DNA of 64,000 bases from Lepidodermella squamata (taxonomy: Eukaryota > Animalia > Gastrotricha), in contig JBLDXI010000002.1 of the NCBI GenBank assembly GCA_047495785.1, positions 1 to 64,000 of the forward strand. The letters are read 5' to 3'. The notes below the pieces were generated by a model, which was not told the origin of the DNA, ran no database searches, and worked only from the letters and a program-made list of their open reading frames with translations. The position numbers were made by a program, and so were the translations under genes. Each line of letters opens with the position of its first letter. The first letter of the stretch is position 1. Positions 1,404 through 54,276 of this stretch are shown here, piece after piece.

Positions 1404-3316
1404 TTACATCAAGCAACAATGATAGCCAACAAAAACAGCATGAAGCATCAAATCACTAAGTGGACTGCAGTTGCTAAGCATAATTTTCAACGAACTCATC
1501 CGTAATGACCTGCCCAAACATTTTGTTTTGTTGAAATAAATCGTTGGGAAGTAGAAGTTATTGTTATAGTTGAAACTGTCATCGCAAACCAATACAATGT
1601 CAGCATACTTGAAGCCCATTTTCAAAGTCTCATTTAGCGTTGAAATTCGTTGAAATTCAATGTGGACTTCAAAGTTGATAGTAAAAGGCTGACTACATCG
1701 CTTGCCCAGTTTGTATGCGATTCCGATTTTCGGCAGGTAATCACATCCCAAATTCATCATGAAATCGCTTTGTTTAAAAGCCAATTGAACCCAGTTTTGA
1801 CCACTTTCGGGTGAAGACGGTGGTAAGTTGAAGTACTGAACATTTTCCCCAGCTGTAACAACAACCTTTGCTCGATCGTAATTAGCTAGAAATCGTTTGA
1901 TGCTAGTTTCAACACGGGATGAATGATTCTGTATCGCTTCAATCAATTTTGTCGTATTGTGGAAGGTCCTTTCCATGGCAATGAAACAATTTGCGGCTGT
2001 GAGCCATGTGCTATTGAAAATTACAGTCACATGACCTATTGGATTGACCTGAGGTGCAAGTTTTGATTTTACGAATGAAGTGGAGTCAGGTAGCGCCTTA
2101 ATCTTCTTCAGGCGATTTAAAAGACTTTGAAATGAAATTTTGAAGTAATTGGTGATCGAAACTGCGATTTCGTGGTGCATGACTTCGGACGGATGAAATC
2201 CATCACTGGAGGTGTAAATTTCTGAAAATAAAGGTTTCCTGTTCTAAAATTAATTGAAATTCAAAAACTTTAAATTTGTCAGAATTTTTCAACATTGAAT
2301 TCGGGGTAGTTGGCAGTAAATTCTTTGAAATTTGCAATTTTTCAATTCAAAAACAGTATCTGTAGCATGCCTTACTTCGAAGTCTGTCTTGAAATTCCGT
2401 CTCCAGATTGTAGCTATCCAGATGGTCACAGATCCTATGCTTCCAAGTAATTGAGGTGAGTTCGTAATGGTCAGCCAAAGTTGCGAAATGCTCATTCTGA
2501 TAGGATTCACAATTCGGTTTGTAACTCCGGTTCCACATCCTAGAAAGTGCGTGGAAGTGGACTAGGACGACGTGAAGATCCGGCGCTTCCCTTCGAATGA
2601 CTCGAATAAGCTCTTCCATCGCATGCGCCTCTCCCTGTGAGAATGGAGCCATTTTACGCTCAGCGGCCATATCGTCGTTCACTGTCAGCTCGATGAAAAT
2701 GACATCGTAATCGGTTAGATTCAGGTGCTCTTTGATACAGGCTGAGTAGTAATTTGATGAGACAGCACTTATAGCTGCATTCCTAACTGAAACTTTTCTT
2801 CCGATTGAATTGAACACGTCACGCAACCAAGCACCAACTTTCTCGGTGTAAACAAGGCTCGTCTGTTATCAAATCATGTTTCAAATTATTGATTAAGTAT
2901 TGGAGTTGTAATAAGCTAACATTTTCAATGCCATGCGCTGCTGAGATTGAGCCGCCGATTGCAGCGATGCGTAGAGGTCGACTAGAATCCTCAAGCACTT
3001 GGATAATTGCCGAGTGAAGCCGAGTTTGATCGCCAAAAATCTGTATCGCTTCTTCCTCCAAATCGATGAATCTCCCTGTTAGTCTATCGAACCCGGTGAT
3101 ATTTGTTATTATTGCCGAAACTGGTAAAGGTTGCAAAATTTGATGGTTTCCGAGGCTGCAGGTTAGATTTATCCAGTAATCGAGTCTCCTTCGTAAAAAA
3201 TTGTCGCCATTATCAACAGAAGAGAGGTTGCGATCCGCTGGGAGGAGATGATAGCCGAAAATGAGTAGACAGGAAGCTATTGCTATTTTGGCAGCCTTTA
3301 CTGCACCTTGAGCCAT
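1404..3316 (-). CDS. GGSI-type SGNH hydrolase-fold protein, signal anchor, Cys-rich C-terminal domain (G1; exons 3316-2921, 2862-2376, 2221-1404)
   Basis: GT-AG splicing gives one open frame with blocks AAIGGSISAAHG, NAAISAVSSNY, ELTVNDD and YTSSDGFHPS. Hydrophobic N-terminus; ends GYHCCLM. Confidence 0.88.
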
Positions 3317-3913
3317 TCCATTTAGGTGAATGTCGCTATATTTTCATCGCGTGGTCGGATGCGGCGTGAACTTATGAGAGGGGCACTGAGCGAATGAATC
3401 CACGCGCATTGAAAAGGTCAGTTCATTGAGAATTGAGCCCTTTTTTCATTTCATTCTAGTAGCTTGTCACACCTGAATGGTTTTAAATCAGAACGTATAC
3501 ATACTCTTTAGCCCCTGATTCTATTAAATTCAATTTCCGAACGTGAATGAATGGCTAATTTCGATTTTCGTTAATAGATACAGTATGTATGTTGGCAGTG
3601 AAAATTAAATTTATTTTGAATATAATCTCATGTCGAGGAAAATATTTCCAATCAGTTCAAGGACAAAGGGAAAAAATGCAGTCGCGTCTAAATCGAAAGT
3701 TTCCAAGTGAATAATCCCTTCTGAATCCGATCAATAATTATTGGTGTAAATTGTAGTGAAAAACGAGAAAATAATGCATAATGAACTAGGTCAATGCTCC
3801 ACGCCCAGTAACGCTGCCAATTCATCTAACAAAAAATGTCGGGTTTTAAAAATAAATGAGAGAAACACGTGCCAAACTTTTTTCACAGCCGATCTTGCAA
3901 GCCTTCATTAAAC

Positions 3914-10409: not shown

Positions 10410-12268
10410 TCAATTACAACATTCATAGGCTAAAATGAGGCTATGTATTTCAGCCATTGTTTTAGGATACACCAGGCGAAGCGTGACCGTCATGCTTTCG
10501 ATCTTCACGTCTCTAGTCCTACATTGCGATTCTACTTCATCAAGGTACATCGGAAGCAGGTAGTGAACACCTCTCAGCCTCCATGGAGCGGTACAAAGCA
10601 AGGGTGCAGTTGGGTGGCGATAAATTCGGTTGAAATTTCTGGAGCCACCAATGGCGAGGACGAACTCGATTTTAACATCAAGAGCAGACGGAAAACCTTG
10701 ATTGCTATAGACGCTGTCAATAACATAACCAATCCCTAATTTCGGCACGTATCCGATTTTATCAGCGCATGGCAGCTTGCCTGTGTTCACCGAGAAATCG
10801 TTACTGTTGAATCGGAATGTAACGAAAGAGCCCATATTTGGCAGGAAAAAATCCACCAGATATTCGCCAGAGTTTGCCTTGACCCTCCTGTGGCGGTAAT
10901 CTGCCACGAACACAATTTGTGTGAAAGAATCGTTCGATTTTGCGATCATTGCGTCGACAAGTCGGTTGCTTCTGACGTGTGGCCGATCCATAGCTAGAAA
11001 ACAGTCTGACGAGCCGATTTTCGAAGCATTTGTCATAAGAGGCGTTTCTTCGATGTCAAGCTTATCAATCGTCGCGAGAGAAACCATTCGATTAGAACCA
11101 TTGTTTGCGATGTCCTTTGAAAGTGTATCCAGAAGGCGCTCGACGGATGCCCTTAGGTAGGATGCCAAACCATTTGCAATTTCGGCATGCATGAGACGCG
11201 ATGGATGAAAATCATTTTGGGACGTTGTGTAAGCGCCTATGACAATATCAAATTAATTATAGATTCAAATAGATTAAATTAACTAGAACAGCATTAAATA
11301 GAATATGAACCTATGGGGCTTAACCTTGCCAACATAAACTTACGCTTGATTGCATCCATTTGAGAGTCCCATGAAGCTGCGTTGTAGCAATTGCAAACGC
11401 GATGGTGCCATCGAATCGTCGTCAGATTGTAATGTTCAGCAACCTGCCTGTGAATTGCCTGATAGATCCGGGAACAATTAGGGGGCTTCGCGAGTACCTT
11501 GTTAGCGTCAGGAAAGTTCATGAGAATAACTTCAATCTTCGGATTCTGTCGTCTAATGACGCGAATCAGTTGTTCGAGGTTATGCCCATCATTGATGAAA
11601 TAGTCATCTAACGGGATATTTACAGCAGAATCATCGTTGACCATCTCATCGATGAAAAAAATGTCAATATCGGTAAGATTCAAATGGCTTTTCACGCAAC
11701 CGGTGAAGTAGTTCGATGTAACTCCACCCAATCCGGCTTTGTAAGCTTCGACTCCAATCCCGACTGAAGCTAGCCAGGAACTCATCCATTCTTTGATCAA
11801 GACATGATATACTTCGTTTTCGTTCACACCGTGACCTGCCGTGATCGACCCTCCGATTGCAGCTATTCGTAAAGGTCGTCGCTTTTCGCCTTTTTGAAGT
11901 AGCAAGTTGACGAGTCGGAGGTGGAATCGGTGTGTGGATCCAAGCGTCTCAAATGACTGCTCGTCGATAGAGTCTGCAGTCAACTTCGGATTACCTTTGA
12001 TTATCAAATTAATCAAGAGTTTTGATCCCATTGGTCGTTTCGGCAAACTAAAGTTGGCTAACAGGCGGAGTCTATCGACAACCGTAAACCAGTCTTCTCG
12101 AGATATCGGCATCTCGGCGTCATTTTCGCTCGGTTTGAAATTAGGCTTGAGGAGGCTTATCGAGCTCGGAACATTTTGAAACTCTAAGTCAAGATACATA
12201 ATAATCCCGAAAATACTTGCGACCGAGAGAATCGAGAATATCCAACCGTTCGACAAAGAAATGTGCAT
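10410..12268 (-). CDS. GGSI-type SGNH protein, 2-exon subfamily (G2; exons 12268-11344, 11236-10410)
   Basis: TM anchor WIFSILSVASIFGIIMYL. Blocks GGSITAGHG, AGLGGVTSNYF, DEMVNDD, YTTSQNDFHPS; ends AYECCN. A phase-1 intron keeps the frame. Confidence 0.9.
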
Positions 12269-12410: not shown

Positions 12411-12944
12411 CCTCAGCCATTTGAAATGATCCAACTGAAGTCGTAGCGCTCCTATTCATTTTTATAGGATTATTGGAAGATATTATTGACAGCATTCATA
12501 GACTCCGCAGACTCAGAATCTCAGACACTGTTATAGGTTAAACTATAAGCGATGCGGAGCAGCCATACTCATTTTCGCGTCGCCGGTACAACATTGTGCA
12601 GTTACTTGCAGTTACAGTCGAGGTACGACGGCAGGAAATAGTGAACGCTTTGATGCAAATTTTGCGTCACACACTGCAGAGAGGCGGTCGAATAGGAGCA
12701 ATGATTTACGAAATTCCTCATCAGTTTTGTACCTACTTGCGGTAGCCCACTTGGAGTATGCAACATCGTTGTGCCTCATTCGTTAGGACCGAGTCTAAAT
12801 CGGACCCGTCTCCTTTCGTCGACGGCGCCATAGTTGTCTCAAACCAACACAAATGTATCATCGACTCGTGAAGTATCTCGTCATAGGACAAGAAACTAAC
12901 TAATAATGACGTAATACGTAACATGTCGTTAGCGTCGTTGAATA

Positions 12945-17989: not shown

Positions 17990-19487
17990 TTAGTTACAAC
18001 ATTCGTAGGATAAAATCAGCTATGTATTTCAGCCGTTGGTTTTGGATAAACCAAGCGGAGCGTTACCGTCATGCTTTCGATCTTCACGTCTCTGGTCCAA
18101 GATTGCGATGATACTTCATCCAGGTACATCGGAAGAAGGTAGTGAACACTTCTCAGCCTAAATGTAGTGGTGCATTGCAAGGGCGCTGTTGGATCGCGAT
18201 ATTCGGTTGAAATTTCTGGAGCCGCCTACGGCGAGGACGAACTCTATTTTAACATCAAGAGCTAGCAGAAAGCCTTGATCGTTACAGACTTCGCCGACAA
18301 CATAACCAAACCCTAATTTCGGCACGTATCCGATTTTATCAACACACGGCAGCTCGCCTCTGTTTACCGAGAAATCCTCATCGCTGAACTGGAATGTTGT
18401 GAAAGAGCCCATTTTTGGCAGGAAAAAATAGACCACATATTCGCCAGAGGTGGCCTTGATTTTCTTGTGGCGGTAATCTGTGATGAAAACATTCTTAGTG
18501 AAAGAGTCGTTCGATTTTGCGATCATTGCGTCGACAAGTCGGTTGCTTCTGACGTGTGGCCGTTCCATAGCTAGAAAACAGTCTCATGAGCCGATTTTTG
18601 TAGCATTTGTCATAAGAGGTGTTTCTTCGATGTCAAGCTTATCAATCGTCGCGAGAGAAACCATTCGATTAGAACCATTGTTTGCGATGTCCTTTGAAAG
18701 TGTATCCAGAAGGCGCTCGACGGATGCCCTTAGGTAGGATGCCAAACCATTTGCAATTTCGGCATGCATGAGACGCGATGGATGGAAGCTATCTTCGGGC
18801 GTCGTGTAAGTACCTTGAAAAATAGTAACATTTAAAATATTAGAACACCACCTTAAAACTGGCGTGAAAAACATAGCCGAAAACTTACGAAGCAGTGCAT
18901 CCATATGAGCGTTCCATGAAGCTGCTTTGTAGTAATGGCAAACGCGATGGTGCCATCGAATTGTCGTCAGGTTGTAATGCGTAGCAACCCGCTTGTGAAT
19001 CGCCTGATAGTTCCGGGAACAATTAGGGGGCTTCGCGAGTACCTTGTTAGCGTCAGGAAAGTTCATGAGAATAACTTCAATCTTCGGATTCTGTCGTCTA
19101 ATGACGCGAATCAGTTGTTCGAGGTTATGCCCATCATTGATGAAATAGTCATCTAACGGAAGCCTAAGAGCAACATTATCATTGACCATTTCATCGATGA
19201 GAAGAATGTCAATATCAGTAAGATTCACATGGCTTTTCACGCAACCCGTGAAGTAGTTCGACGTAACTCCACCAACTCCGGCACTGTAAGCTTCGACTTC
19301 AAGCCCGACTTGAGCTAGCCAGGAACTCATCCAACCTGCGATTAAGACGTGATAAACCTCGCTTTCGTTCAAACCATGACCTGCCGTGATCGACCCTCCG
19401 ATTGCAGCTATTCGTAAAGGTCGTCGCTTTTCGCCTTTTTGAAGTAGCAAGTTGACGAGTCGAAGGCTAAATCGGCCTGTGGATTCT
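17990..19487 (-). pseudogene. GGSI-type SGNH pseudogene (G3), 5-prime truncated
   Basis: Paralogous to G2/G7. In-frame TGA at 18584-18586, 2-nt deletion near 18200, lacks the N-terminal ~110 codons. Intron 18814-18888. Confidence 0.9.
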
Positions 19488-20967: not shown

Positions 20968-22672
20968 TCACTCGCAGTGATAACCAATTATAATAGCGTG
21001 AAAAATGAAGGATGTCGCTTGATTAGCTGTCGTAATCGCCACAGCAAGTGACAAAAGCTCCAATCCATCTTCGTAACAACCAGGTAGAATCGGCTCAAAG
21101 TAATGCACGCTGTTGTAGTTGAATTCCTGGCTGCAATCTAGCTGAACCCCGATGTAGCTCAACGAAGTTTTTTTGACTAAACCAGGACTACGGCCGAGGT
21201 AGAACTCGACTTCAGCCTCAAGATTGATCATAAAGCCGTGGCTGCAATTTTTACCGATTTTGTAAGCCAAGCCAAGCCTCGGGGCCAGGCAAGTATTAAA
21301 AACAGATCCTGTAAGATCGGACTCGTTAAATTTGAAAGTCAGCGATGCAGATCGATCAGGCAGGAAGAAATACTGGACGTATTCTCCAGATTGAACGTTA
21401 TACTTCGCATGACCATAATTTGCAATGTAATGTTTCAGTTTCAGCGTGAGATCGCCGGATTGGCGAACCAAAGCATTCATCAGCCGACTGTTGTTCACAA
21501 ATTTACGATCGGTGGTCAGAAAACAATCGGCACTTGTAAGCCAAGTTCGCTTGAACATTGGGACCATCTCTTTTGCTGAATGTTCAGATTTTCCGATCAG
21601 CCCATATTCCAAGAAATTCTGAGCTGATTTCCGGAAGTAATTCGCTAGGAATGCTGCCATCTCGTAATGCATTAGGGCTGACGGGTGGTAGTTATCTTCG
21701 GACGATATGTAGCGACCTGTAAATCAAAGCCGAAAATCAATCAAATCAACCAAAATTCACTCACCCCACATTTTCTCCTGCAGGTCCATCCTATTGTAAG
21801 CTGTGAGGTGATCACAGATCAGATGCTTCCATTGAACCACGGAAATGTCGTAATACTTCGCAACCGCAATGAAATTCGTATCTTGATAGGTAACGCAGTT
21901 AGGAACTGGTGCAAGCCACAGCATATGCGTATCAGGGAAGTTGATGCTTATGATGTGGATTCTTGGATTTAACCGGCGAATAACTCTTATGAGTTCCTCG
22001 AATGGGCTAACGTCTTCGCTGCTGTAGCCTTCGAGGTTACGGTCGATTGATTTGTGGTCATTGATTGAAACTTCAAGGAATGCTACGTCGTAGTTGGTTA
22101 GGTTCAATAATTCTTGAACGCAGGCTGAGAAATAGTTGCTTGAAACTGCACTCGTGGCAGCGTTGTCCAAAATAATGTTGATTCCAAGCTCCGCCAGCCA
22201 GATCTCCAGCCAGTCAAACAATGAGTTGAGATAAAGGTCTGTTGCCTGTGAACAACCTGATTTATCCCGGTTCTCAAGCTAAAGCTCAACTTACATTTAT
22301 CCCGTGAGCAGAAGATATGGATCCTCCGATAACTGCGATTCGCAATGTAGTTTTATTGCCGGAGATTAATTGCCGAAATACGTCATGTAGAGATCTCGGG
22401 TCGCCAAAATTGAGGATCGATTCGTCATCACTTACGTTGAAGAGATTTCGTAACAAAAATGAATCTTCTCGCAAATCCGGTAGAGGAAAGCTGGCTAGTC
22501 TCTGCAGTGTGTCATTCAATCCTACATTTGCAGCTCGGTAGGAGGGATTAGGCGGGAAGATGAGTTTAACTTCGATCGATTTAGCCAATTCATACGAGGT
22601 TGAGTAGATCAGAAGCAGCACAAGTAAAACTGAGGCGGTAAATATCCAGAATATTCCTCTGTTCGTTTTCAT
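20968..22672 (-). CDS. GGSI-type SGNH protein (G4; exons 22672-22295, 22245-21765, 21716-20968)
   Basis: TM anchor GIFWIFTASVLLVLLLIY. Blocks GGSISSAHG, EVSIND, YISSEDNYHPS; ends GYHCE. Near-identical to G9. Confidence 0.9.
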
Positions 22673-22876: not shown

Positions 22877-23293
22877 CTAGCAGCAGTGGTAGCCTAATAC
22901 AACAGCATGAAAGATGAGCTGCGTCTCGGCATTAGCAGTTTGCAGTCGAACTTTCATCGTCTCTATTCGCACTTTGTTGTCCCAGCAGCCCTCTTCGATC
23001 GACAATGGCTCAAAGTAATGCATGCTGTGGTAGTTGAAGCCCTCACAGTCCAGCTTAACGTTTGAATACGATTTCTGCAGCTCATTTCCATTCGATAGCT
23101 TCAAATCCAGGCTTGCAGTCACGGAAAAGGGTTTGGTTTCAGAGCAATTTGTACCAATTTTATAGGCTATTCCTAATCGAGGTAGATACTTGGAGCATGG
23201 CTGGACGAAATCGTTGCGATTGAACTGAAATTGAACCCAAGATTCAGTGTTTGGCAGACGTAAATATTGAATATACTCCCCATAGTTTACTTT
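22877..23293 (-). pseudogene. 3-prime fragment of an SGNH gene (G5), copy of the G10 C-terminus
   Basis: Nearly identical to 44223-44640. Homology stops at ~23293, where a MITE begins. Confidence 0.88.
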
Positions 23294-31007: not shown

Positions 31008-31175
31008 CAGTGCTGTTGAATAGATTTGCAATCAAATCTATTTTAGTATCAGGTTTTTCAAATCAAAATCAAATCAAATCTCACATGTTAAAAAGTCAAA
31101 TCAAATATAATCAAATCACCACAATCAGTTTTAGCTTCAAATCATTCCCACTCAAATCAAATCAAATCAAATTAA
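31008..31175. repeat. AAATC-rich subterminal repeat array, probable end of a hAT-like element truncating the SGNH remnant
   Basis: Starts cagtgctgttgaatagatttg, followed by about 10 (c)aaatc units. Second end not found. Confidence 0.45.
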
Positions 31176-35190: not shown

Positions 35191-37292
35191 TCAAGTACAA
35201 CATTCATAAGCTAAAATAAGGCTATGTATTTCAGCCATTGTTTTAGGATAAACCAAGCGGAGCGTGACAGTCATGCTTTCAATTTTCACGTCCCTGGTCC
35301 AACATTGCGACGATACTTCATCAAGGTACATTGGAAGCAAATAGTGAACACTTCTGAGCCTAAATCGAGCGGTACATTGCAAGGGCGCAGTCGGATCGCG
35401 ATAAATTCGTCTAACATTTCTGGAGCTGCCAATGGAGAGGACGAGCTCGATTTTGATGTCAAGAGCCAACGGAAGGCCTTGGTCGTTACAGACCTTGTCG
35501 ATAACATAACCAATCCCCAATTTCGGCACGTATCCGATTTTATCAGCGCACGGCAGTTCGCCTCTGTTTACCGAGAAATCGTCGTTGTTGAACTGGAACG
35601 TTGTGAAAGAGCCCATATTTGGCAGGAAAAAATAAACCACATATTCGCCAGAGGTAGCCTTGATTCTCCTGTGGCGGTAATCTGTAATAAACATATTTGT
35701 AGTAAAAGAATCGTTCGATTTAGCGATCATTGCATCAATAAGTCGGTTGCTTTTGACGTGGGGCCGTTCCATAGCTAGAAAACAGTCCGCAGAGCCGATT
35801 TTCGAAGCATTTGTCATAAGAGGCGATTTTTCGATGTTGAGTTTATCCATCGGGGTCTCGAGAGAAACTGTATAATTGGAATAATTGCTTGCGAAGCCCT
35901 TTGAAAGCGTATCCAGAAGGTGTATGGCGGACGCCCTTAGGTAGAATGCCAAACCATTTGCTATTTCGGCGTGCATAAGATAAGACGCGATGGATGGAAG
36001 TCATCTTCGGACGTTATGTAAGCACCTAGGAAAAATGTAAAATTTATCAGAAAAGGATAAGTTAAAATACGAGCACGCTTATGAAATTGAAGGTTCCTTA
36101 TTGGGAAAGCCGAGAAATTTCAGGCTTGCTACCGGGAAGGCCTGCGAGATATCTCGTGATATATCGTATCCAACCCACCTTAATAACAAAAACTGCACAT
36201 TTGCAATTCCATTTCGACTTATTTCAAAACTAAGGGGCGCCGGAAGCGAACAAATTGGAAATAAAGAAAACGGGACAAAAAATAAAAACATATTGGGGTA
36301 GCCATCCCAGCAGTGAGCAGTGAGCGTTAAATTCAAATTTTAGTAATGCAAGTCTAGCTGATTCAAAACTTACGCTGGATTGCACCCATATGAGCTTTCC
36401 ATGAAGCCGCTTTGTAGTAATTGCAAACGCGATGGTGCCATCGAATGGTCGTAAGATTGTAGTGATTCGCAACCTGATTGTGAATCGCCTGATAGTTCCA
36501 GAAACAATTGGGGTGCTTCGCGAGTACCCCACCAGTTTCAGGAAAGCTAATCAAGATAACATCAATTTTCGGATTCTGTCGCCTTATGACGCGGATCAAT
36601 TGTTCAAGGTTATGCCCATCATTGATAATATAGTCATCCAGCGGGATATTTACGGCAGAATTATCATTGACCATCTCCTCGATGAAAAGAATGTCAATAT
36701 CGGTAAGATTCAAATGGTTTTTCACGCAACCGGTGAAGTAGTTCGAAGTAACTCCGCCAAATCCGGCGCTGTAAGCTTGGACTTCAAGCCCGACTTGCGC
36801 TAGCCATGAACGCATCCATTCTTCAATTAAGACATGATACACTTCGCTTTCATTCACGCCGTGACCTGCTGTGATCGACCCTCCCATTGCAGCTATTCGC
36901 AGGGGTCGCCTTTCGCCTCTTTTAAGTAGCAAGTTGACGAGTCGAAGGTTAAATCGGTCTGTGGATCCAAGCGTCTCAATCGACTGCTCGTCGATAGAAT
37001 CAGCTGTCAAGTTCGGGTTGCCTTTCTTTATCAAATTGATCAAGAAATTTGATTCCATCGGTCGTTTCGGCAAACTAAAATTGGCTAATAAGCGGAGTCT
37101 TTCGGTAACCGTAAACCAGTCTTCTCGAGATATCGGCAAGTCGGAGTCATTTTCGCTCGGTTTGAATTTGAGCTTGAAGCTCGTCGAGCTAGGAAAATTC
37201 TGAAACTCGAAGTCAAAATTCACAATCATTGCGATAATTGCTGCGACCGAGAGAATCGAGTAAAGCCAACCGCTCGACGAAGAAATGTTCAT
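35191..37292 (-). pseudogene. GGSI-type SGNH gene with a 5-bp frameshift after the catalytic His (G7; exons 37292-36374, 36025-)
   Basis: The duplication taagataaga at ~35976-35985 makes the spliced frame read YITSEDDFHPSRLILCTPK-stop. The C-terminal domain (ends AYECCT) is open in another frame. Confidence 0.82.
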
Positions 37293-37879: not shown

Positions 37880-38021
37880 GAATGCCCTTCGCTCGCCTTA
37901 TTGAAGCAGCAATTTGAAGCAGCCTGAGATGAAACCTATCCTGGAAACCTGCTATCCATTTTGACTGCTCATCGAGATCAGCTGCGAATACTCCGAAGTT
38001 CCCTTGTTTTAACAGATCCAC
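37880..38021 (-). pseudogene. Decayed SGNH exon-1 remnant
   Basis: DLLKQGN..AADLDEQSKWIAGFQDRFHLRLL..IAA aligns with G6/G7 NLIKKGN..DEQSI..G..RFHL(R/K)L. Confidence 0.65.
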
Positions 38022-42265: not shown

Positions 42266-44022
42266 TTATCGAGCTCCCTCACAGTGATAACCAATTATTA
42301 TCGCGTGGAAAATGAAGGATGTCGCTTGATTAGCTGTCGTAATCGTCACAGAAAGTGACAAAAGCTCCAATCCATCTTCGTAACAACCAGGTAGAATCGG
42401 CTCGAAGTAATGCACGCTGTTGTAGTTGAATTCCTGGCTGCAATCTAGCTGAACCCCGATGTAGCTAAAGGAAGCTTGTTTGACTAAACTAGGACTACGG
42501 CCGAGGTAGAACTCGACTTCAGCCTCGAGATTGATCATGAAACCATGGCTGCAATTTTTACCGATTTTGTAAGCCAAGCCAAGCCTCGGGGCCAGGCAAG
42601 TATTACAAACAGATCCTGTAAGATCGGACTCGTTAAATTTGAAAGTCAGCGATGCAGATCGATCAGGCAGGAAGAAATACTGGACGTATTCTCCAGATTG
42701 AACGTTATACTTCGCATGACCATAATTTGCAAGGTAATGTTTCAGTTTCAGCGTGAGATCACCGGAATGGCGAACCAAAGCATTCAGCAGCCGACTGTTG
42801 TTAACAAATTTACGATCGGTGGTCAGAAAACAATCGGCACTTGTGAGCCAAGTTCGCTTGAACATTGGGACCAGCTCTTTTGCTGAATGTTCAGATTTTT
42901 CGATCAGCCCATATTCCAAGAAATTCTGAGCTGATTTCCGGAAGTAATTCGCTAGGAATGCTGCCATCTCGTAATGCATTAGGGCTGACGGGTGGTAGTT
43001 ATCTTCGGACGATATGTAGCGACCTGTAAATAGCCGAAAATCAATCCCATCAACCAAAACTCAAAAACTTCAGTTTTCGGGGTATTTAGGAATGGAAATA
43101 CCAAAATTGCTCACCCCACATTTTCTCCTGCAGGTCCATCCTATTGTAAGCGTTGAGGTGATCACAGATAAGATGCTTCCATTGAATCACGGAAATGTTG
43201 TAATACTTCGCAACCGCAATGAAATTCGTATCTTGATAGGTAACGCAATTAGGAACAGGCGCAAGCCACAGCATATGCGTATCAGGGAAGTTGATGCTAA
43301 TGATGTGGATTCTTGGATTTAACCGGCGAATAACTCTTATGAGTTCCTCGAACGGGCTGACGTCTTCGCTGCTGTAGCCTTCGAGGTTACGGTCGATTGA
43401 TTTGTGGTCATTCATTGAGATTTCAAGGAGTGCTACGTCGTAACTGGTTAGATTCAAGAATTCTTGCACGCAGGCTGAGAAATAGTTGCTTGAAACTGCA
43501 CTCGTGGCAGCGTTGTCCAAAATAATGTTGATTCCAAGGTCCGCCAGCCAGATCTCCAGCCAGTCAAACAATGAGTTGAGATAAAGGTCTGTTGCCTGTG
43601 AACAACCTGATTTATCCCGGTTCTCAAGCCAAAGCTCAACTTACATTAATCCCGTGAGCAGAAGATATGGATCCTCCAATAACTGCGATTCGCAATGTAG
43701 TTTTATTGCCGGAGATTAATTGCCGAAATACGTCATGTAGAGATCTCGGGTCGCCAAAATTGAGGATTGATTCGTCATCACTTACGTTGAAGAGATTTCG
43801 TAACAAAAATGAATCTTCTCGCAAATCCGGTAGAGGAAAGCTGGCTAGTCTCTGCAGTGTGTCATTCAATCCTACATTTGCAGCTCGGGAGGAGTGACAA
43901 GGCGGGAAGATGAGTTTAACTTCGATCAATTTAGCCAATTCATACGAAGTTGAGTAGATCAGAACTAGCACAAGTAAAACTAAAGCGGTAAATATCCAGA
44001 ATATTCCTCTGTTTGTTTTCAT
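42266..44022 (-). CDS. GGSI-type SGNH protein (G9; exons 44022-43645, 43595-43115, 43023-42266)
   Basis: TM anchor. Blocks GGSISSAHG, EISMND, YISSEDNYHPS; ends GYHCEGAR. Confidence 0.9.
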
Positions 44023-44222: not shown

Positions 44223-46087
44223 CTAGCAGCAGTGGTAGCCTAATACAACAGCATGAAAGATGAGCTGCGTCTCGGCATTAGCAGTTTGCAGTCGAACTTT
44301 CATCGTCTCTATTCGCACTTTGTTGTCCCAGCAGCCCTCTTCGTTCGACAATGGCTCAAAGTAATGCATGTTGTGGTAGTTGAAGCCCTCACAGTCCAGC
44401 TTAACATTTGAATACGATTTATTCAGCTCATTTCCATTCGATAGCTTCAAATCCAGGCTTGCAGTCACGGAAAAGGGTTTGGTTTCAGAGCAATTTGTAC
44501 CAATTTTATAGGCTATTCCTAATCGAGGTAGATACTTGGAGCATGGCTGGTCGAAATCGCTGCGATTAAACTTAAATTGAACCCAAGATTCAGTGTTTGG
44601 CAGAAGTAAATATTGAATATACTCCCCATAGTTGACTTTCACCTTAGCCCGGCCGTAATTTGCAATGTAATGCCTAAGGGTAAAATCGAACCCAGGTGAT
44701 GCGGCGACAATTGCATCGAATAGTTTGGTATTCCTTCTGAATGACCGTTCTGTTGCAAGGAAACAGTTAGCAGCTAACAGCCAAGAGTCTTCACAGATTG
44801 GTTCGATGATTTCGACGTCTTCGCTCAACTTTTCTCTGATTGACTCGAGTGATTGGGACTCTTGCATACTGGCTTTGAGTGAGCTGATCGATTTCATGAA
44901 ATATTTCGCTATGGCTATAGCGATTTCTCGATGGACGAGGGAAGATGGATGGGCATGGTCATCAGGTGAAACGTAACGACCTAGTTTCTAATATAAGTTA
45001 AGATGGAGTTAACACTATTGAATTTTACCGATAAAATCGTCATTCGCCTCTTCGTCATTCTGCAGCACTTTTTCGAAAGTTTCATAGTGCTTGCAAATCC
45101 GATGCTTCCATTGGATTGATGTGACGTTGTAGTGCCTCGCCACGTCCAAATAATGGCTGTCTTGAACCGAATCACATCTTTCCGATTCAGTTTCAGTCGT
45201 CCATAGGTAGTTGATAGGGAAATTCACAATGATGATTTCGATGTTAGGATTTGTTCTCCGGATGCTGCGAACAAGTTCTTCCATGCAGTGCGCGTCTTGG
45301 TATTCGTAGCCTTCGAGCAACTGGCTCATTGATAAGTCGTCGTTAGTCGCGAAGTCGAGGAAGATCACGTCGTAGTCACGAAGATTGAGATGTTCGTTGA
45401 TACAAGCGGAAAAGTAATTGCTTGAAACAGCGCCAACTGCGGCATTGTGAGCGACTACGTCAATATGGAATGGTTGTAGCATGGTTTTGAACCAATTAGC
45501 CAAAACTTGAAAATACACATCCTTTTTCTGGAAAAAAAATCAATTTAAACAAAGTTATATTCAGCCTAGTATTGGAAATGCGAATTTTAAGAATTTTTCA
45601 ACACAAAATCGAGGTATTTCAAGCTTACGTCTATTCCATGGCCGGCCGAGATGGAACCGCCGATAGCCGCCATTCGAAATGTTCTCCCAGCTGCAGGATC
45701 TGTGAGCAAATCGACCCATCTTCTGTGGAATCGACTTTGATCGCCATGAAATTGAATAGCTTCTTCGTCGAAATCAAGATTTTTGGTTGGCATGAATTTC
45801 GCGTACTTCTCGACGAAAATGGTTGACCTTGCGTCTTCTTCCGGCAATTTTTGACCCACGAGACGGTTCAATTTACCGATCAATTCATCGGGAGATATTA
45901 GTTCCCTTGCCTTATCGGGGAAAGGATCTGTTCCATAGGAAATCGGATAGCTTGAGGATTTCTTAGCGTTTGTAACTCTTATTGGTAATGAGTAGAGCAC
46001 GATTGTGAATAAGGCTATTGCGATAATTAAGGCTAGTTTAATTTTACGAGAGACTACTTGTTTTTTTCTGAACACGAGAAATTGCAT
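44223..46087 (-). CDS. GGSI-type SGNH protein (G10; exons 46087-45629, 45527-45029, 44980-44223)
   Basis: TM LALIIAIALFTIVLY. Blocks GGSISAGHG, NAAVGAVSSNYF, DFATNDD, YVSPDDHAHPS; ends GYHCC. Confidence 0.9.
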
Positions 46088-46561: not shown

Positions 46562-48460
46562 CTAACAGCAATGATAACCTAGAACAATAGCGTGAAAAAT
46601 TAACTTTGTCACAGAATTCGCCGGTTGCAGCTTTACGTTCATCGAATCTATGACAACTCCCTTATCCCAACATGTATCCTCGCTGTGACTGATCTGGATA
46701 GGTTCGAAATAATGAACGGTGTGGTAGTTGAAATCATCGCAAAACAGTTTGACATCGTTATATTTCTTCGTCAACATTCGCGGTCTTGTCCAAGAAAGAT
46801 GCGATACTTCCAATTGTAGAGTAACGTCAACCGAAATCTTAGTGTTTTCGGAGCAATTCTTGCCGATTTTATAAACGATTCCTAGCCTGGGGATGAACGA
46901 TTCCGAATACTGACAAGGTCTCTCATTGTTCGGCATCAAATCACTTCGATTAAACTGAAATTGGATCCAAGCGTTTTTGTTAGGGAGGAAAAAGTACTGA
47001 ATATTCTCTCCAGAATTCGCTTTTGTCTTACCGCGGCCGTAATTCGCGATGTAGTGCTTGAGAGATAGATCTGCCTCTGGTGATTTTGCTACAACCGAAT
47101 CCAGCAATTTTGTGTTGTTTTTGAATGGTCTCTCCATTGTAAGGAAGCAATTTGATGTGAGCTGCCAAGTTTTATCGAAAAATGGGACAATTCCTTCAAT
47201 AGAACCTCCAAGTCGATGAATTGAGACTTCTTTATCAGAACCCGAAAGGCTGTCCAACAAAGCGTTAATAGATTTTTTGAAGTAGTAGGCAAATGATAGC
47301 GCTATTTCTTTGTGGAGAAGCGGAGATGGATGAGCGTTGTCGTCTTGAGATACGTACAGTTCTATAAACGCTTTACAAAACGAAACAAATTGGAATTAAG
47401 AGAAAATACGAACCAATAATTTTATCATGAAGCCAATCGCTCTTTTCAAGAAGTATCTTGACCTCGTCGTAGTATTTACAAATTCGCTGTTTCCACCCTA
47501 TTGACGTCACGTTGTACCATTTTGCGAGTTCGTAGAAATGAACGTCTTGAATCCGTTCACATTTGCCAGACTCTTCCTCTGCCCATTGGTAATAGTACGA
47601 AAAGTTGACGATGACAATATCGATCGCAGGGTTCGACCTTCGAATGTTGCGCAGCAGTTCTTCCATACAATGACCGTCGTCGTACTCGTAGCCCTCGAGA
47701 GAAGAAGCTATAGATAAGTCGTCGTTAACTGCGAAATCAAGGAAGATCATGTCGTACCGGCGAAGGTCCAAATGCTCGTTGACGCAGGAAGCAAAGTAGT
47801 TGCTGGAAACTGCTCCAACTGCGGCATTTTCAGCGACTACTTCGATGTTGAACGGTTCGAAGAGAGATTTTAACCAATTCGTTAGAACATTGACATAAAC
47901 GCTGGCGCGCTATTGTAAAAAAATTGAGTTGTTAGTAGGATCAGCTAATAATCCCCCACGCTATCAATTCTGATATTATTTTTTTCTGCACTGTCGACAA
48001 TATGTATATGGTAACCTGAGGCGAGGAATCTCGAGGAATGACTCACCTCAACTCCGTGACCTGCCGAAATCGAACCACCGATTGTTGCGATTCGGAACAC
48101 TTTCTTAGCAGTTGAATCTGTTAACAGCTCAATCAACTTGCTATGGAAACGGCTCTGATCCCCAAAGAACTGAATCGCTTGATCATCGAGATCGTAACCA
48201 TCTGGTGGAAGAAATTGCCGATAGAAGTCGGGTAGAATCGACGATAGCGGGTCTGACTCCGGCAACGGGTGGCTAGCCATGCGTCTCAATTTTTCTATGA
48301 CACCCTCGATTGATGATATCGCAACTCCATTTTCCCTGGGAAATCTTTCCACCTCCATTTCCAAATAAGGAAATCGCAAGAGAATCAGTATGAAACATGC
48401 GATTATACAAGCGTGAAAAGTAACAATTCGTCGTGCTGGACATCTGATACAAGAAACCAT
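46562..48460 (-). CDS. GGSI-type SGNH protein (G11; exons 48460-48047, 47909-47414, 47361-46562)
   Basis: TM IVTFHACIIACFILILL. Blocks GGSISAGHG, DFAVNDD, YVSQDDNAHPS; ends GYHCC. Confidence 0.88.
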
Positions 48461-48932: not shown

Positions 48933-50838
48933 TTAGCAGCAATGATAACTTAGAACAATAGCATGAAATATCAATTTTGTGTCAGAACTTGCCGGTTGCA
49001 GCTTGACCCTCATCGAATCTACCACAAAACCCTTGTCCCAACATTTATCCTCGCCATGGCTGATCACAACAGGGTCGAAGTAATGCACCGTGTAGTAGTT
49101 GAACTCATCGCAAAACAGTTCGATATTGTCATACTTCCTCTTAAAATTTCTTACCTTCTTCGTCCAAGAAGGATGCGATACTTCTAATTGAAGAGTAGCA
49201 TCCACAGAAAACTTTGAATTTGCAGAACAGTTCTTGCCAATTTTATAAACGAGTCCGAGCATTGGAATGAACGATTCCGATAGATGGCAAGGTCTCTCAG
49301 TATTCAGCATCAAATCACTTCGATTAAACTGAAATTGGATCCAAGCGTTTTTGTTAGGGAGGAAAAAGTACTGAATATTCTCTCCAAAATTCGCTTTTGT
49401 CTTACCGCGGCCATAATTCGCGAGGTAGTGCTTAAGAGATAGATCTGCATCAGGGGATTTTGCTACAACCGAATCCAGCAATTTTGTGTTGTTTGTGAAT
49501 GGTCTTTCCATCGACAGGAAGCAATTTGTAGTTATTAGCCACGTATCTTCGTAAAATGGAGCTATTTCCTCGACAGATTTAGGCCGAAAGAAAGCGACTG
49601 TCTCTTCTGATTTCGAAAGACTGTCTAGCAAAATGTTGATGGATTTTTTGATGTAGTGAGCGATCGTTATAGACATTTCCTTGTGGAGAAGTGGGGATGG
49701 ATGTGTGAGATCTTGACGCGAAATGTAGGTGTCTGCAAAAGCGTTGGGTAATAACTGCTAAATCGTTTCGAATATTTACAAACCCCTGAACTTATCCATC
49801 AAGTCGCCAACAACTTTCTGAATCTTATCGATGTAAGGGCACACTCGCTGCCGCCAGCCGATCGCTGTGATGTTGTACAGCTTGGTGAGACTCGGGTAAT
49901 AAACGTCCTGCATCTGGTCGCATTCGCCACTTGTGTAAACACTCCACAGGTAATCGTTCGCGAAATTGACGATAACGATATCGATAGCAGGGTTGGTTCG
50001 TCGTATGTTGCGTAGCAGCTCTTCGAAGCTATGAGCCTCAGGATCCTCGTAGCCTTCCACGAGAGCTCCCATTGACAAGTCGTCGTTAACTGCGAAATCA
50101 AGGAAGATCATGTCGTACTGGCGAAGGTCCAAATGCTCGTTGACGCAGGCGGCAAAGTAGTTGCTGGAAACTGCTCCAACTGCGGCATTTTCAGCGACTA
50201 CTTCGATGTTGAAAGGTTCGAAGAGAGATTCCAACCAGTTGGTCAGGAGATAGAAGTAAACGTCGCTTCGCTGGCGTTAACATAAAAGTAAAATTCAAGC
50301 AATTCCATGGAAATTGCGACAAAGCCAATGCGTGAAGTTGAACCCCTCCCTTTCTAGTTTGAGAGGTCCACGAAAGGGACCGAAATAACCTTCTTGTTCG
50401 TAAACTGACCTTAACGCCGTGAGCAGCTGAGATGGAACCGCCAATCGCAGCTATTCGAAACGTCTTATTAGAATCGGAATCTGCTAGCAGCTCAATCAGC
50501 TTGCTGTGAAACCGGCTCTGATCGCCAAAGAATTGTATTGCTTGTTCCTCGTAATCGAACCCTTCAGGTATGAATTCTTTGTAAGCCTCGGGTAGAATCG
50601 ATGATAAAGGATCATCCTCCGGTAGCGGGTGTCTAGCCATGCGTGTCAATTTTTCTAAAACAATCGCTTTCTTCTCGTGGTCCTGCAATATCGACTGAAC
50701 TTTTTCGTCGGGCAATGGCAGTAACTGACGGTTTCCAAGCAACGCATAATGGATGAATTGCACGTAAATTAATAGTCCGATGCAGACAACAATCAGGCCA
50801 GCGATAGCCCTGATTCGCCGAGTAAAGTATCTGAACAT
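48933..50838 (-). CDS. GGSI-type SGNH protein (G12; exons 50838-50410, 50270-49784, 49732-48933)
   Basis: TM AIAGLIVVCIGLLIYV. Blocks GGSISAAHG, DFAVNDD, YISRQDLTHPS; ends SYHCC. Confidence 0.9.
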
Positions 50839-51637: not shown

Positions 51638-52079
51638 CTGAAAAATTGAAAAATAGGGGAAATAAAATAGAGAATAATTTTTATTTATTTTAATAAGGCA
51701 TCAAAAACTGAAAAATAGTGGACAAATATTTAATTCGATTTTAAAAAATTAAGAAAATTCGAAAAGTGAAATTTAAAGAATTCGAATTTCAGGAAAAATT
51801 ATAAAGAAAATCGCATAATCAAGAGCAAGATTCGAAATATTTTTGAGTATTCGAGAGGTAATATATTAATTTATTAAAAGTCTAAAATTTGCCACATTTC
51901 CCTCTCCATAGATGAATTTGCTCACATTTCTCAGTGCTTACGTGCTCAGCAACATATCCGGGAACATTTCGGCAGCTGATTAAACTTGACCTAGTCGCAA
52001 AGTTTCATGTGATCAACAAAATAATTCGTCATTTTATTACCAGGTATGAAAATTACTACGGCTCGGTTTTATTTTTTGT

Positions 52080-54276
52080 TCAGCAGCACTGATAACTCAA
52101 AATAATTGCATGGAAAATAAATTTTGACACTCGGCTCGTTTTAGTGACTGTCACGTTCATTGAGTCTATTTTATAATTAGCCGACCAGCACGATTCATCG
52201 CCATCGCCAAGATACATCGGGTCAAATTGTAGAATATTGGAATAAGAAAATCGCCCGCATTGGACTTGAACATTTTCCTGCGAAAATTTGTACCTCACGG
52301 CCTTGCTGGACCCAGGCAGCCGTAGAGCCAGGGTGACTACAGCGCTGATAATCAAAGGGTCAGTTTCCGAACAATTATTGCCGATTTTATGAGCCAGTGC
52401 AAGTCGCGGAACGTAATGTCCGGATCTAGGGCAATTTTCCGCGGATGTATTCGCGAAATTCGAACCATCGAAATCGAATCTCATCCAAGAATCTTTGCCA
52501 GTGAGATGGAAAAAATCGATATTTTCACCCGATTCCACGTGAAATTCGGCGTGGCCGTAATTTGCGATGTAAAATTTTTCGATTGATGCCGATGAACCGG
52601 CCGATTTAGCTGATAGAGCTTTGACTAGGTGGGAATTTCGCCCGAAAGTTCGGTCGATCGATAGAAAACATTTGTGGGCGAAATTCTGTGAATTTTCGAA
52701 AACAGGATCCGGCAAATTTCGCTCTGAATTGTTCGAAAATAACTTGAATTTAGGATTGAGAGATGCTTTGTCCATTGAAGAATTCATTGATTTTTGAAAG
52801 TGGCGAATTATCGAATAGACCAGTTCGCTATGCATCAGAGGCGAAGGGTGTAAGCCATCATTTGAAGTGTACAATTCTAAAGAAAGTTGAAAAATGATAA
52901 AAATGGTTTTTCGTGAAGAAATAGTAAAAATTCAATTTCCAATTTTAAAATTTTAATTAATATCTTTTTGTTGAAACAAATTGAGGTTTTCTCTCATTTT
53001 GAAAATTCATTCTCTTTCATTTTTAATTTGAATATTTGAAAAATTCGAAAAAATTTGAAAATTAGGAAATACCTGCAATTTTTATTCTGAAATCCGGTTC
53101 ATCCCGAATGCGGCTTGAAATCGCAGCTGTTTTGCATATTAAAGATTTCCAAGTGATCGAGGTGATATCGTACTGTTGAGCGATCGAAAGGTGATTTTTC
53201 TCGACTTCAGACTCACAAAATTGCCCATCAGTGTTGTTTTTCAATTTAGCAACATCCGGGAAATTAACGATAATAATCTCAAGGTCAGGATTTCGAGTTC
53301 GCAAAACTCGAATTAATTCTTCAAAACTTGGAGCGGCATCTCGGCTGAATCCGGCCAGATTTCTATTGATCGCGATTTCGTCATTCAGGGCAAAGTCGAG
53401 GAAGATCAAGTCGTATTGAGGTAGATCAAGGTGTTCGGTTATGCAGGATGAGAAATAATTACTGGCAACAGCACCCACGGCGGCATTGTCCAGGGTGACA
53501 CGAATGTCCGAAGGCTTTAGAGCTGAACTCATCCAGGTTGCAAATTTACTTGCGTAGAGATCATCTGGCTAATGGACAAAAATGAGTCAACTCAATTCGA
53601 CCTGGAAAATTCTCTTATGCGAAAAATTTTATTTTCAGGGAATCAAGTTGATAACAGAGATTTTTCATTATTGATTAAATTTAATAATTATATTGATATT
53701 AATAATTATATAATTAAAAAATTTTAAATTTCAAATTTTTAAAATGAATTCCTAAAATTTCTTAAAAATTGACATTTTCAATTTTCAATTCAATTTTTCA
53801 CACAAATTTCTAAATTTCAAGATTCAATTTCAAATTCTGCCCTCGAAATTATTTCGAAAAAGCTCATTTTTTGCTACTTTTCCGCTGATTATTTTTCCGC
53901 TCACCTTTATTCCATGAGCAGCCGAAATCGATCCGCCAATAACCGAAATTCGAAGGATTTTCTCATCGCCAGAACTCTGATTGAACATTCTGACAATTTT
54001 TCGGTAAAATTTAGACAGATCCCCGGCGTTTGAAACTGAGTAGTCATTGAGTTCAGCCAAGCGTGACAGCAGCGATTCGTCTTCCAGCCTTGGCAGCGGG
54101 TAATTGACCAGATTGTGCAACGCCTCGGCTAATAAATTCGTTTGATTTTTCACCGATTTTCCGATGAAAAAGCTTGGCAATATTTGAAGATAGGAATTAG
54201 CCAACATCAGGGTGACTAGAGCTGGCACGGCGAGGAAAAGCCGCGGCTCAACGGCATTCAGGCGGTTCCGCTTCAT
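52080..54276 (-). CDS. GGSI-type SGNH protein (G13; exons 54276-53905, 53568-53073, 52876-52080)
   Basis: TM LFLAVPALVTLMLA. Blocks GGSISAAHG, NAAVGAVASNYF, DFALNDE, YTSNDGLHPS; ends SYQCC. Confidence 0.9.

What the first reader, a model, noticed from the sequence alone, without database searches (positions are those of the whole stretch)
1404..54276. Large tandem family of membrane-anchored GGSI-SGNH enzymes with an unrecognised Cys-rich C-terminal domain
Seen: 9 intact genes and 6 broken copies share one architecture. It is a short N-tail, TM helix, stem, SGNH core (GGSI(S/T)xxHG instead of GDS; block III ND/NE; block V (D/N)xxHPS, which lies just after an intron and before most called ORF starts) and a ~230-aa domain (CFL, Y(G/R)(R/H), (P)(R/K)LG, terminal YxC(C)) that I cannot assign. 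Established: TM-stem-catalytic topology is typical of Golgi or cell-surface glycan-modifying enzymes, and SGNH-fold proteins such as plant TBL/PMR5, CASD1, NXPE and AlgX/AlgJ add or remove O-acetyl groups. GGS-type SGNH blocks are familiar from bacteria, algae and Cryptococcus Cap64/Cas3-like proteins. Inference: a lineage-specific battery of glycan O-acyl transferases or esterases, possibly with a new carbohydrate-binding module.
Basis: partly seen in the sequence, partly recalled or inferred. Interest (0 to 1): 0.85.

Follow-up and report, generated by a model that had tools for sequence, protein, structure and literature searches.

The report
Membrane-anchored CE17-like acetylesterase gene array
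An animal-type genome carries a tandem array of nine intact, expressed genes for membrane-anchored enzymes whose only detectable relatives are bacterial two-domain sugar deacetylases (family CE17). The "unknown" C-terminal domain is predicted to be a carbohydrate-binding-type beta-sandwich.

Summary
On the minus strand between 1404 and 54276 there are nine intact genes (535-583 aa), two near-full pseudogenes and four fragments. All share a short N-tail, one hydrophobic anchor, a stem, an SGNH core and a Cys-containing C-domain of about 210 aa. The core has IGGSI(S/T)xxHG, VND/VNE and (D/N)xxHPS.

RNA contigs confirm three of my splice junctions. dN/dS between paralogues is about 0.2-0.25.

The core is not an orphan. 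Its best solved relative, by sequence and by fold, is RiCE17 (6HFZ), the founding CE17 2-O-acetyl-mannan esterase, built as SGNH plus a C-terminal CBM35. The only homologues in 5.8 billion proteins are bacterial two-domain proteins of that type.

The C-domain has no sequence relative anywhere. A modest AlphaFold model gives a jelly-roll whose best matches are CBM35/CBM6 modules and Cry toxin domain III.

Best reading: luminal or cell-surface CE17-like glycan O-acetylesterases, possibly from an old bacterial transfer, with a remodelled binding module. Activity, substrate, topology and origin are inferred. This is a new variant of a known kind.

The parts
1404..3316 (-). c1, intact gene, 566 aa. 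Three exons: 3316-2921, 2862-2376, 2221-1404.
   Evidence: Spliced model has no internal stop. HMM pieces. Junctions.
10410..12268 (-). c2, intact gene, 583 aa. Two exons: 12268-11344, 11236-10410. Block V reads NDFHPS, so Asn replaces the triad Asp.
   Evidence: The donor C|GTAAGT is conserved in c2, c3 and c8.
12614..12718 (-). Short family fragment matching C-domain HMM positions 493-527.
   Evidence: hmmsearch on the six frames, E 0.0026. Weak.
18019..19483 (-). c3, pseudogene. N-terminus is missing. There is an in-frame stop after ...KIGS and a frameshift near the 3' end. The 75-nt intron is open in frame, which gives the 288-aa ORF 18584-19450.
20968..22672 (-). c4, intact gene, 535 aa. 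Three exons: 22672-22295, 22245-21765, 21716-20968. Ends in HCE.
22880..23293 (-). c5, fragment of the C-domain only (HMM positions 415-567).
   Evidence: E 1e-57.
25841..29346 (-). c6, intact gene, 582 aa. Two exons: 29346-28407, 26649-25841. The intron is 1757 nt. Block III is VNE.
30934..31017 (-). c7, short C-domain fragment.
   Evidence: E 9e-6.
35191..37292 (-). c8, near-full pseudogene. A 5-nt TCTTA duplication just after HPS shifts the frame. The intron is 348 nt.
37905..38021 (-). c9, short fragment of the stem region.
   Evidence: E 0.004. Weak.
42266..44022 (-). c10, intact gene, 538 aa. Three exons: 44022-43645, 43595-43115, 43023-42266. 95% identical to c4.
   Evidence: dN/dS against c4 is 0.25.
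44223..46087 (-). c11, intact gene, 571 aa. Three exons: 46087-45629, 45527-45029, 44980-44223.
46562..48460 (-). c12, intact gene, 569 aa. Three exons: 48460-48047, 47909-47414, 47361-46562.
   Evidence: An RNA contig carries the spliced exon1/exon2 junction.
48933..50838 (-). c13, intact gene, 571 aa. Three exons: 50838-50410, 50270-49784, 49732-48933. Its last exon was used for the C-domain model.
   Evidence: RNA joint 49732/49784 skips 51 nt with CT..AC ends. AlphaFold model.
52080..54276 (-). c14, intact gene, 554 aa. Three exons: 54276-53905, 53568-53073, 52876-52080.
   Evidence: RNA joint 52876/53073 skips 196 nt with CT..AC ends.

Best explanation
These are paralogous single-pass (signal-anchor, type II) membrane proteins. 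Their luminal or extracellular part is a two-domain carbohydrate O-acetylesterase of the CE17 type.

Proposed mechanism:
- The SGNH domain uses the Ser of IGGSI as nucleophile.
- The block III Asn, plus a block II backbone NH, forms the oxyanion hole.
- The His of (D/N)xxHPS acts as base.
- A C-terminal beta-jelly-roll of the CBM35/CBM6 kind holds the glycan over the active site, as the CBM35 clamp does in RiCE17.

The paralogues (28-67% identical, apart from one recent pair at 95%) probably differ in which acetylated glycan or position they accept.

What is shown: gene structures, splicing of three junctions, SGNH membership, closest relatives, purifying selection.

What is inferred: esterase (not transferase) chemistry, a carbohydrate substrate, topology, and the role of the C-domain.

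The gene may descend from a bacterial two-domain gene taken up long ago. It then acquired introns and duplicated in tandem. The N-terminal hydrophobic segment may derive from the bacterial signal peptide.
For: - Pfam PF13472 hits every core tested.
- The best PDB sequence match of the window core is 6HFZ/6HH9, E 1.9e-5. Block I, II and III motifs align, and tpeDsfHPs aligns to tpD-DlHPn. A profile including the window sequences gives E 1.9e-33.
- Foldseek of the core model puts 6HFZ chains at ranks 1-4.
- 6HFZ is RiCE17, an SGNH + C-terminal CBM35 protein and a 2-O-acetyl-mannan esterase (PMC9487903). Its catalytic residues are Ser41-His193-Asp190 with Asn110, and its CBM35 clamp is needed for activity (bioRxiv 10.64898/2025.12.12.693890).
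- The only homologues in 5.8e9 proteins are bacterial proteins of 356-445 aa with IGGSITAG, block V DxxHP and a C-terminal beta-domain of about 150 aa. One of them hits 6HFZ at 6e-38. Their C-domains weakly match CE2_N and CBM_35_2.
- hhalign of the nine spliced proteins against the bacterial set gives 99.4% probability and E 3e-21. The match runs from the stem helix, through block V, into the linker.
- The C-domain model is a nine-strand sandwich. In an unbiased search of 48,161 PDB chains the top rows are Cry domain III (Z 9.1-9.3) and CBM35 modules (Z 8.1-8.8). 6HFZ's own CBM35 scores Z 7.2.
- The last exon encodes block V and the C-domain together. The phase-1 intron before it is shared by both subfamilies. 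So the two domains were already one gene before the intron arose.
- Secretory-pathway features: 4-12 NxS/T sequons and ten conserved Cys columns.
- dN/dS is 0.20-0.25.
- The genes are expressed and spliced.
Against: - The C-domain shows no detectable sequence homology to the bacterial CBM35-like domains (hhalign probability 0.1-0.4%) or to anything else.
- The C-domain model is only moderate (mean pLDDT 60; 65-88 in most of the sandwich). Z of 8-9.5 is not far above the aligner's stated background of 7-8.
- The domain is about 70 aa longer than a CBM35, with an extra helical N-terminal part that carries the invariant CFL...R motif.
- The block II Gly is Ala in seven copies, and c2 has Asn at the triad Asp.
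- The window clade sits on a long branch (1.84 substitutions per site) from the bacterial sequences, so substrate specificity cannot be transferred from RiCE17.
- The core model used the pseudogene c3 with 25 intron-encoded residues. I could not read coordinates, so Ser-His-Asp distances were not measured.
- No activity data exist.
Confidence: 0.6

Rival explanations
1. They are Golgi-resident glycan O-acetyltransferases. The same Ser-His machinery forms an acetyl-enzyme that is resolved by a sugar hydroxyl instead of water, as in plant TBL proteins or bacterial PatB/OafB SGNH domains. The paralogues would decorate the animal's own glycans.
For: - The type II anchor + stem + catalytic domain layout is the classical Golgi enzyme topology (established knowledge).
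- SGNH transferases PatB (7tjb) and the OafA/OafB periplasmic domain (6se1) are among the fold matches of the core (ranks 31-36).
- RiCE17 itself transacetylates in vitro.
Against: - The closest relatives by sequence and fold are hydrolases (CE17, TesA, CE2, CE3).
- No acetyl-donor partner (AT3/Cas1/RWA-type multi-pass protein) is seen in the window.
- Transferase matches rank well below the esterases.
Confidence: 0.2
2. They are membrane-bound lipolytic or general acyl-hydrolases (lysophospholipase/TesA-like, or detoxifying esterases). The C-terminal sandwich would then be a protein- or lipid-binding or oligomerisation module, not a carbohydrate module.
For: - TesA/lysophospholipase L1 structures are strong fold matches of the core (ranks 5-15).
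- Source names of some bacterial homologues read 'lysophospholipase L1-like esterase' or 'acyl-CoA thioesterase'. These are automatic names.
- The same jelly-roll fold also occurs in non-lectin proteins such as the Eph ligand-binding domain, APC10 and hinokiresinol synthase.
Against: - The specific best match is the two-domain CE17 esterase, not single-domain TesA.
- The IGGSIT motif and the two-domain architecture are shared with the CE17-like bacterial set.
- CBM35/CBM6/CBM22/CBM36 modules dominate the named matches of the C-domain.
Confidence: 0.12
3. The array is not functional animal DNA. It is bacterial contamination, an assembly artefact or a decaying repeat.
For: - Six of fifteen copies are broken.
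- The only homologues are bacterial.
Against: - The genes have spliceosomal GT-AG introns of 48-1757 nt, and three junctions are confirmed in RNA contigs.
- G+C is uniform at 0.36-0.44 across the window.
- The array is interleaved with animal-type genes: Cys-loop channels, a hAT transposase and IAH1-like genes.
- dN/dS is 0.2-0.25.
- A second run holds 79% of the sampled words of 48900-54300.
Confidence: 0.02

Closest known systems
CE17 carbohydrate esterases, founding member RiCE17 of Roseburia intestinalis (PDB 6HFZ/6HH9)
   Same: - N-terminal SGNH domain with GGSIT-type block I, then GIGG(T/V)xS, VND and DxxHP, followed by a C-terminal beta-sandwich.
- Best sequence match and best fold match of the core.
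- The C-domain model aligns to the CBM35 part of 6HFZ at Z 7.2, and to other CBM35s at Z 8.1-8.8.
   Different: - The window proteins are eukaryotic, intron-bearing and anchored by an N-terminal transmembrane segment with a 60-110 aa stem.
- The C-domain is about 210 aa rather than about 140. It has 6-7 conserved Cys and a helical N-terminal extension, and is not alignable by sequence.
- Block II Gly is Ala in seven copies.
- Core identity is only about 20-25%.
- CE17 has been characterised only in Bacillota.
Uncharacterised bacterial two-domain 'SGNH/GDSL hydrolase family proteins' (P0001-P0008, P0010-P0017; Abditibacteriota, Verrucomicrobiota, Bacteroidota and metagenomes)
   Same: - They are the only homologues found in 5.8e9 proteins.
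- 24-37% identity in BLASTP local alignments covering 29-59% of the core query.
- Same motif set and the same domain order.
- They also share the helix before block I (GDxxRL... against GDxSRFH...) and the linker after block V.
   Different: - They have signal peptides instead of an anchor, and no stem.
- Their C-domain is shorter and Cys-poor, with weak CE2_N/CBM_35_2 signal.
- They are separated from the window clade by a long branch.
CE2 esterases and CE12/YxiM-type rhamnogalacturonan acetylesterases (SGNH plus an appended jelly-roll CBM)
   Same: An SGNH catalytic domain is combined with a galactose-binding-like beta-sandwich that helps bind the polysaccharide (PMC9487903). CE2 structures appear among the fold matches.
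   Different: In CE2 the sandwich is N-terminal. The core motifs are GDS-type. Sequence similarity is much weaker than to CE17.
   Same: Type II or luminal topology and Ser-His chemistry on glycans (established knowledge, not tested here).
   Different: None of them appeared in any sequence, family or fold search here. They use GDS-type blocks and other accessory domains.

Membership tests
SGNH/GDSL hydrolase superfamily (Pfam clan, PF13472 Lipase_GDSL_2) | Significant match to the family profile above the curated cut-off | tested here: met
   PF13472 scores 41-46 bits against a cut-off of 32.9 for c3, c6 and c8 cores.
SGNH/GDSL hydrolase superfamily (Pfam clan, PF13472 Lipase_GDSL_2) | Four conserved blocks: Ser (I), Gly (II), Asn (III), Asp-x-x-His (V) | tested here: met
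   - Ser135, Asn205 and His316 (c13 numbering) are invariant in all nine copies.
- Asp is present in eight; c2 has Asn.
- Block II Gly is kept in c2 and c6 and is Ala in the other seven.
SGNH/GDSL hydrolase superfamily (Pfam clan, PF13472 Lipase_GDSL_2) | Three-layer alpha/beta/alpha fold with five parallel strands and a converging Ser-His-Asp | tested here: inconclusive
   The model of the c3 ORF shows five strands alternating with helices (pLDDT 80-90 in the strands, mean 67). It matches SGNH structures with probability 1.00. Inter-residue distances could not be read from the tool output.
Carbohydrate esterase family 17 (CE17) | Significant sequence similarity of the catalytic domain to a characterised CE17 member | tested here: met
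   - 6HFZ is hit at E 1.9e-5 by a single window ORF.
- It is hit at 1.9e-33 by the mixed profile.
- hhalign to bacterial relatives gives 99.4%, and those relatives hit 6HFZ at 6e-38.
- Similarity is distant (about 20-25% identity). Formal CAZy assignment was not checked.
Carbohydrate esterase family 17 (CE17) | C-terminal CBM35 domain following the SGNH domain | tested here: inconclusive
   Domain order and the predicted jelly-roll fold agree: CBM35 at Z 8.1-8.8 and 6HFZ at Z 7.2. There is no sequence homology and the model has mean pLDDT 60.
Carbohydrate esterase family 17 (CE17) | Aromatic clamp residue of the CBM over the active site (Trp326 in RiCE17) | not testable with these tools
   This needs a full-length model. 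Spliced proteins could not be handed to the structure tool by reference.
Carbohydrate esterase family 17 (CE17) | 2-O-acetyl esterase activity on beta-mannans | not testable with these tools
   Biochemical.
Type II (signal-anchor) membrane proteins of the secretory pathway | A single N-terminal hydrophobic segment of about 19 or more residues after a short, positively charged tail, with the rest luminal | tested here: met
   - There is one 19-mer of KD 1.6-2.6 at residues 6-36 in all nine copies, with no second comparable segment.
- Seven of nine tails have 2-6 K/R residues.
- There are 4-12 sequons and 9-12 Cys after the segment.
- No dedicated predictor was available. A cleaved signal peptide is not excluded for c1 and c14.

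The most novel reading that the evidence does not exclude
An animal lineage captured a bacterial CE17-type two-domain acetylesterase gene. It gave the gene spliceosomal introns and turned the signal peptide into a membrane anchor with a stem. It rebuilt the CBM35 into a larger disulfide-stapled jelly-roll that no longer resembles any known sequence. It then expanded the gene into a fast-diverging tandem battery of at least nine enzymes. This would be the first CE17-like family in Metazoa and a new carbohydrate-binding module family.
Probability: 0.4. Interest if true: 0.7.

Novelty: new variant of a known kind. Interest (0 to 1): 0.55.

Why it matters
Animals have few carbohydrate esterases of their own. 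CE17 is so far a small bacterial family, characterised only in gut Firmicutes.

A membrane-anchored, multi-copy CE17-like family in an animal would add a new case of a domesticated microbial CAZyme. It would give a natural series of diverged paralogues for mapping what sets acetyl-position specificity. It would also define a new sequence family of CBM35-like modules.

The report also shows that the 'unassignable' domain can be placed at fold level, and that the architecture has a solved bacterial precedent to guide experiments.

Tried and rejected
- **C-domain by single sequence.** Searched against 1.84e9 representatives. The one hit, P0009, is a 2223-aa bacterial repeat protein matched on a 33-residue stretch. 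I judged it spurious.
- **C-domain by profile.** Searched against the 5.8e9 collection, the PDB, Pfam and NCBIfam. Nothing was found.
- **hhalign of window against bacterial C-domains.** Probability 0.1-0.4% in three modes.
- **ESM Atlas by features.** The last exon gave unnamed algal clusters at 0.93-0.94, but the recognition score was below the tool's threshold. The profile search did not recover them, so they remain an untested lead. Atlas by shape gave only generic sandwiches.
- **First mixed alignment for the core model (A3).** It misplaced the last-exon rows and was discarded for A4.
- **The search for related loci with alignment A5.** The bacterial genomic context was therefore not examined.
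- **Organism identity.** It could not be established. Run names are coded, and word searches of earlier notes gave nothing.
- **Contamination or artefact.** Rejected on introns, RNA joints, neighbouring genes and dN/dS.
- **Full-length models.** Not attempted. A spliced protein has no reference, and typing about 570 letters is barred.

Full report
**What is there.** The window has uniform G+C of 0.36-0.44 and many minus-strand ORFs that fall into two recurring kinds. tblastn with these ORFs and a family HMM run on the six-frame translation place every family piece on the minus strand between 1404 and 54276.

From three-frame reading and an enumeration of frame-keeping GT-AG pairs I built nine complete spliced models of 535-583 aa. 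They have no internal stops.

The family splits into two subfamilies:
- Subfamily A (c2, c6, and the broken c3 and c8) has one intron.
- Subfamily B (c1, c4, c10, c11, c12, c13, c14) has that same intron plus a second one just after IGGSIxxxHG.

The shared intron is phase 1 and sits immediately before block V in every copy. Its donor, C|GTAAGT, is conserved in c2, c3 and c8.

The broken copies are:
- c3: N-truncated, with an in-frame stop and a frameshift.
- c8: a 5-nt TCTTA duplication after HPS.
- Four fragments: 12614-12718, 22880-23293, 30934-31017 and 37905-38021.

**Expression and constraint.** Contigs of run X1, which the tool itself marks "RNA?", carry joints 49732/49784 (51 nt skipped) and 52876/53073 (196 nt skipped). 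Both have CT..AC ends and are identical to my c13 and c14 introns. Depth falls to zero inside the c14 introns. A loose end at 50179 is absent from the genome. It equals the spliced exon1/exon2 junction of c12.

dN/dS is 0.25 for c4/c10, 0.25 for c12/c13 and 0.20 for c2/c6. These are therefore real, spliced, constrained genes. Contamination is excluded.

**Architecture.**
- Each protein has a single N-terminal hydrophobic 19-mer (KD 1.6-2.6). Seven of the nine have 2-6 K/R residues before it.
- No second hydrophobic segment is comparable.
- There are 4-12 N-glycosylation sequons, and ten Cys columns are held by at least 7 of 9 copies (three in the core, six or seven in the C-domain).
- This fits a signal-anchor protein with a luminal or extracellular body. 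No dedicated predictor was available.
- Ser of IGGSI, Asn of block III and His of HPS are invariant.
- The triad Asp is present in eight copies (Asn in c2).
- Block II Gly is kept in c2 and c6 and is Ala in the other seven.

**The core has a close known relative.**
- Pfam sees only PF13472.
- The best solved relative of a window ORF is 6HFZ/6HH9, E 1.9e-5. Blocks I-III align, and tpeDsfHPs aligns to tpD-DlHPn. A profile gives 1.9e-33.
- 6HFZ is RiCE17, the founding CE17 enzyme: an SGNH domain followed by a CBM35, specific for 2-O-acetyl groups on mannans (PMC9487903).
- Its catalytic residues are Ser41-His193-Asp190 with Asn110, and its CBM35 clamp carries Trp326 (bioRxiv 10.64898/2025.12.12.693890).
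- I modelled the core on the only uninterrupted ORF, the pseudogene c3. That ORF includes 25 intron-encoded residues. The model gave the five-strand alpha/beta/alpha pattern (mean pLDDT 67, strands 80-90). Foldseek ranked 6HFZ chains first.
- I could not read coordinates, so triad geometry is not measured.

**Distribution.** Two searches of the 5.8-billion-protein collection used a length range that includes full-length relatives. They returned only 8 and 13 proteins, all bacterial, of 356-445 aa apart from one partial 193-aa sequence.
- These proteins share IGGSITAG, NAGIGGTxS, VEFAVND and DxVHP.
- They also carry a C-terminal beta-domain of about 150 aa, which weakly matches CE2_N and CBM_35_2.
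- One of them hits 6HFZ at 6e-38.
- Profile-profile comparison of the nine spliced proteins with the first eight of these bacterial proteins (those) gives 99.4% probability and E 3e-21. The match runs from the helix before block I through block V into the linker.
- In a maximum-likelihood tree the nine window proteins form one clade (100/100) on a long branch of 1.84.
- This points to one origin followed by local duplication. The tree is unrooted and thinly sampled, so it names no donor and does not prove transfer.
- Other first-stage notes on this genome list several candidate bacterial-type genes with introns. These are leads I did not test.

**The C-domain.** No sequence method finds a relative:
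- phmmer over 1.84e9 representatives: one spurious repeat hit.
- A profile over the 5.8e9 collection.
- The PDB, Pfam and NCBIfam.
- hhalign against the bacterial C-domains: 0.1-0.4%.

AlphaFold on the last exon of c13, with ten paralogues as the alignment, gave mean pLDDT 60 (65-88 in most of the sandwich). The model has the last SGNH helix, a poorly defined helical stretch that carries the invariant CFL...R motif, and nine strands.

Fold matches:
- Foldseek lists CBM6, CBM22, CBM36, CBM61, Fbs1, PP2 lectin, APC10 and Cry toxin domain III.
- In an unbiased alignment to 48,161 PDB representatives, the top rows are Cry domain III (Z 9.1-9.3) and CBM35 modules (Z 8.1-8.8). Z is still 7.1 at rank 50. 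6HFZ's CBM35 part scores Z 7.2.
- The tool states that a typical best Z without a true match is 7-8.

So the fold class (galactose-binding-like jelly-roll) is well supported. A specific CBM35 ancestry is not.

An independent argument for common descent with the CE17 module comes from gene structure. Block V and the whole C-domain share one exon in all copies, so the two domains were already contiguous when the family's oldest intron arose.

**Reading.** The most economical explanation is a family of membrane-anchored, luminal or surface CE17-like glycan O-acetylesterases. The binding module has diverged beyond sequence recognition, and the genes have been duplicated and diversified in tandem.
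- Hydrolase rather than transferase chemistry is inferred from the nearest relatives only.
- A Golgi acetyltransferase role is the main rival.
- A lipid or thioester hydrolase role is less likely.
- Substrate identity cannot be carried over from RiCE17 at about 20-25% identity.

**Novelty.** The architecture is known in bacteria (CE17). I found no report of it in animals and no eukaryotic homologue. The anchor, stem and enlarged Cys-bearing sandwich are new features. I rate it a new variant of a known kind, of moderate interest.

Noticed in passing
window 51292-51618 (-): A 108-aa ORF with one predicted transmembrane helix lies between c13 and c14. It is covered by RNA contigs of run X1 (depth 17-34 over 51072-51640). 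It is unrelated to the family.
   Followed up: partly
window 38833-42166 (+): Three IAH1-like GDS-type SGNH esterase ORFs (PF13472 and PF00657 for the one tested, 38833-39528) are embedded on the opposite strand inside the array. They are a different SGNH subfamily.
   Followed up: partly
window 13863-15806 (-): A 647-aa hAT-type transposase ORF (DUF4371 + hAT dimerisation domain) lies between intact c2 and the truncated pseudogene c3. Transposon activity may have broken c3.
   Followed up: partly
window 26650-28406 (-): The single intron of c6 is 1757 nt, while its paralogues have 75-348 nt at the same site. This is probably an insertion. Its content was not analysed.
   Followed up: no
window 3869-5290 (+): A 473-aa Cys-rich ORF with a signal-peptide-like start and repeated CxCxC-type units. 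It has only a sub-threshold Pfam CXCXC hit.
   Followed up: no
window 33444-34646 (+) and 62488-63225 (+): Two Cys-loop ligand-gated channel ORFs. The first, the one tested, matches Neur_chan_LBD plus a weak Neur_chan_memb. They interleave with or flank the array.
   Followed up: no
window 35979-36032 (-), copy c8: The frameshift in c8 is a tandem 5-nt duplication (TCTTA TCTTA) directly after the catalytic HPS codons. It could be a recent inactivation or an assembly error. No reads were laid on it.
   Followed up: no
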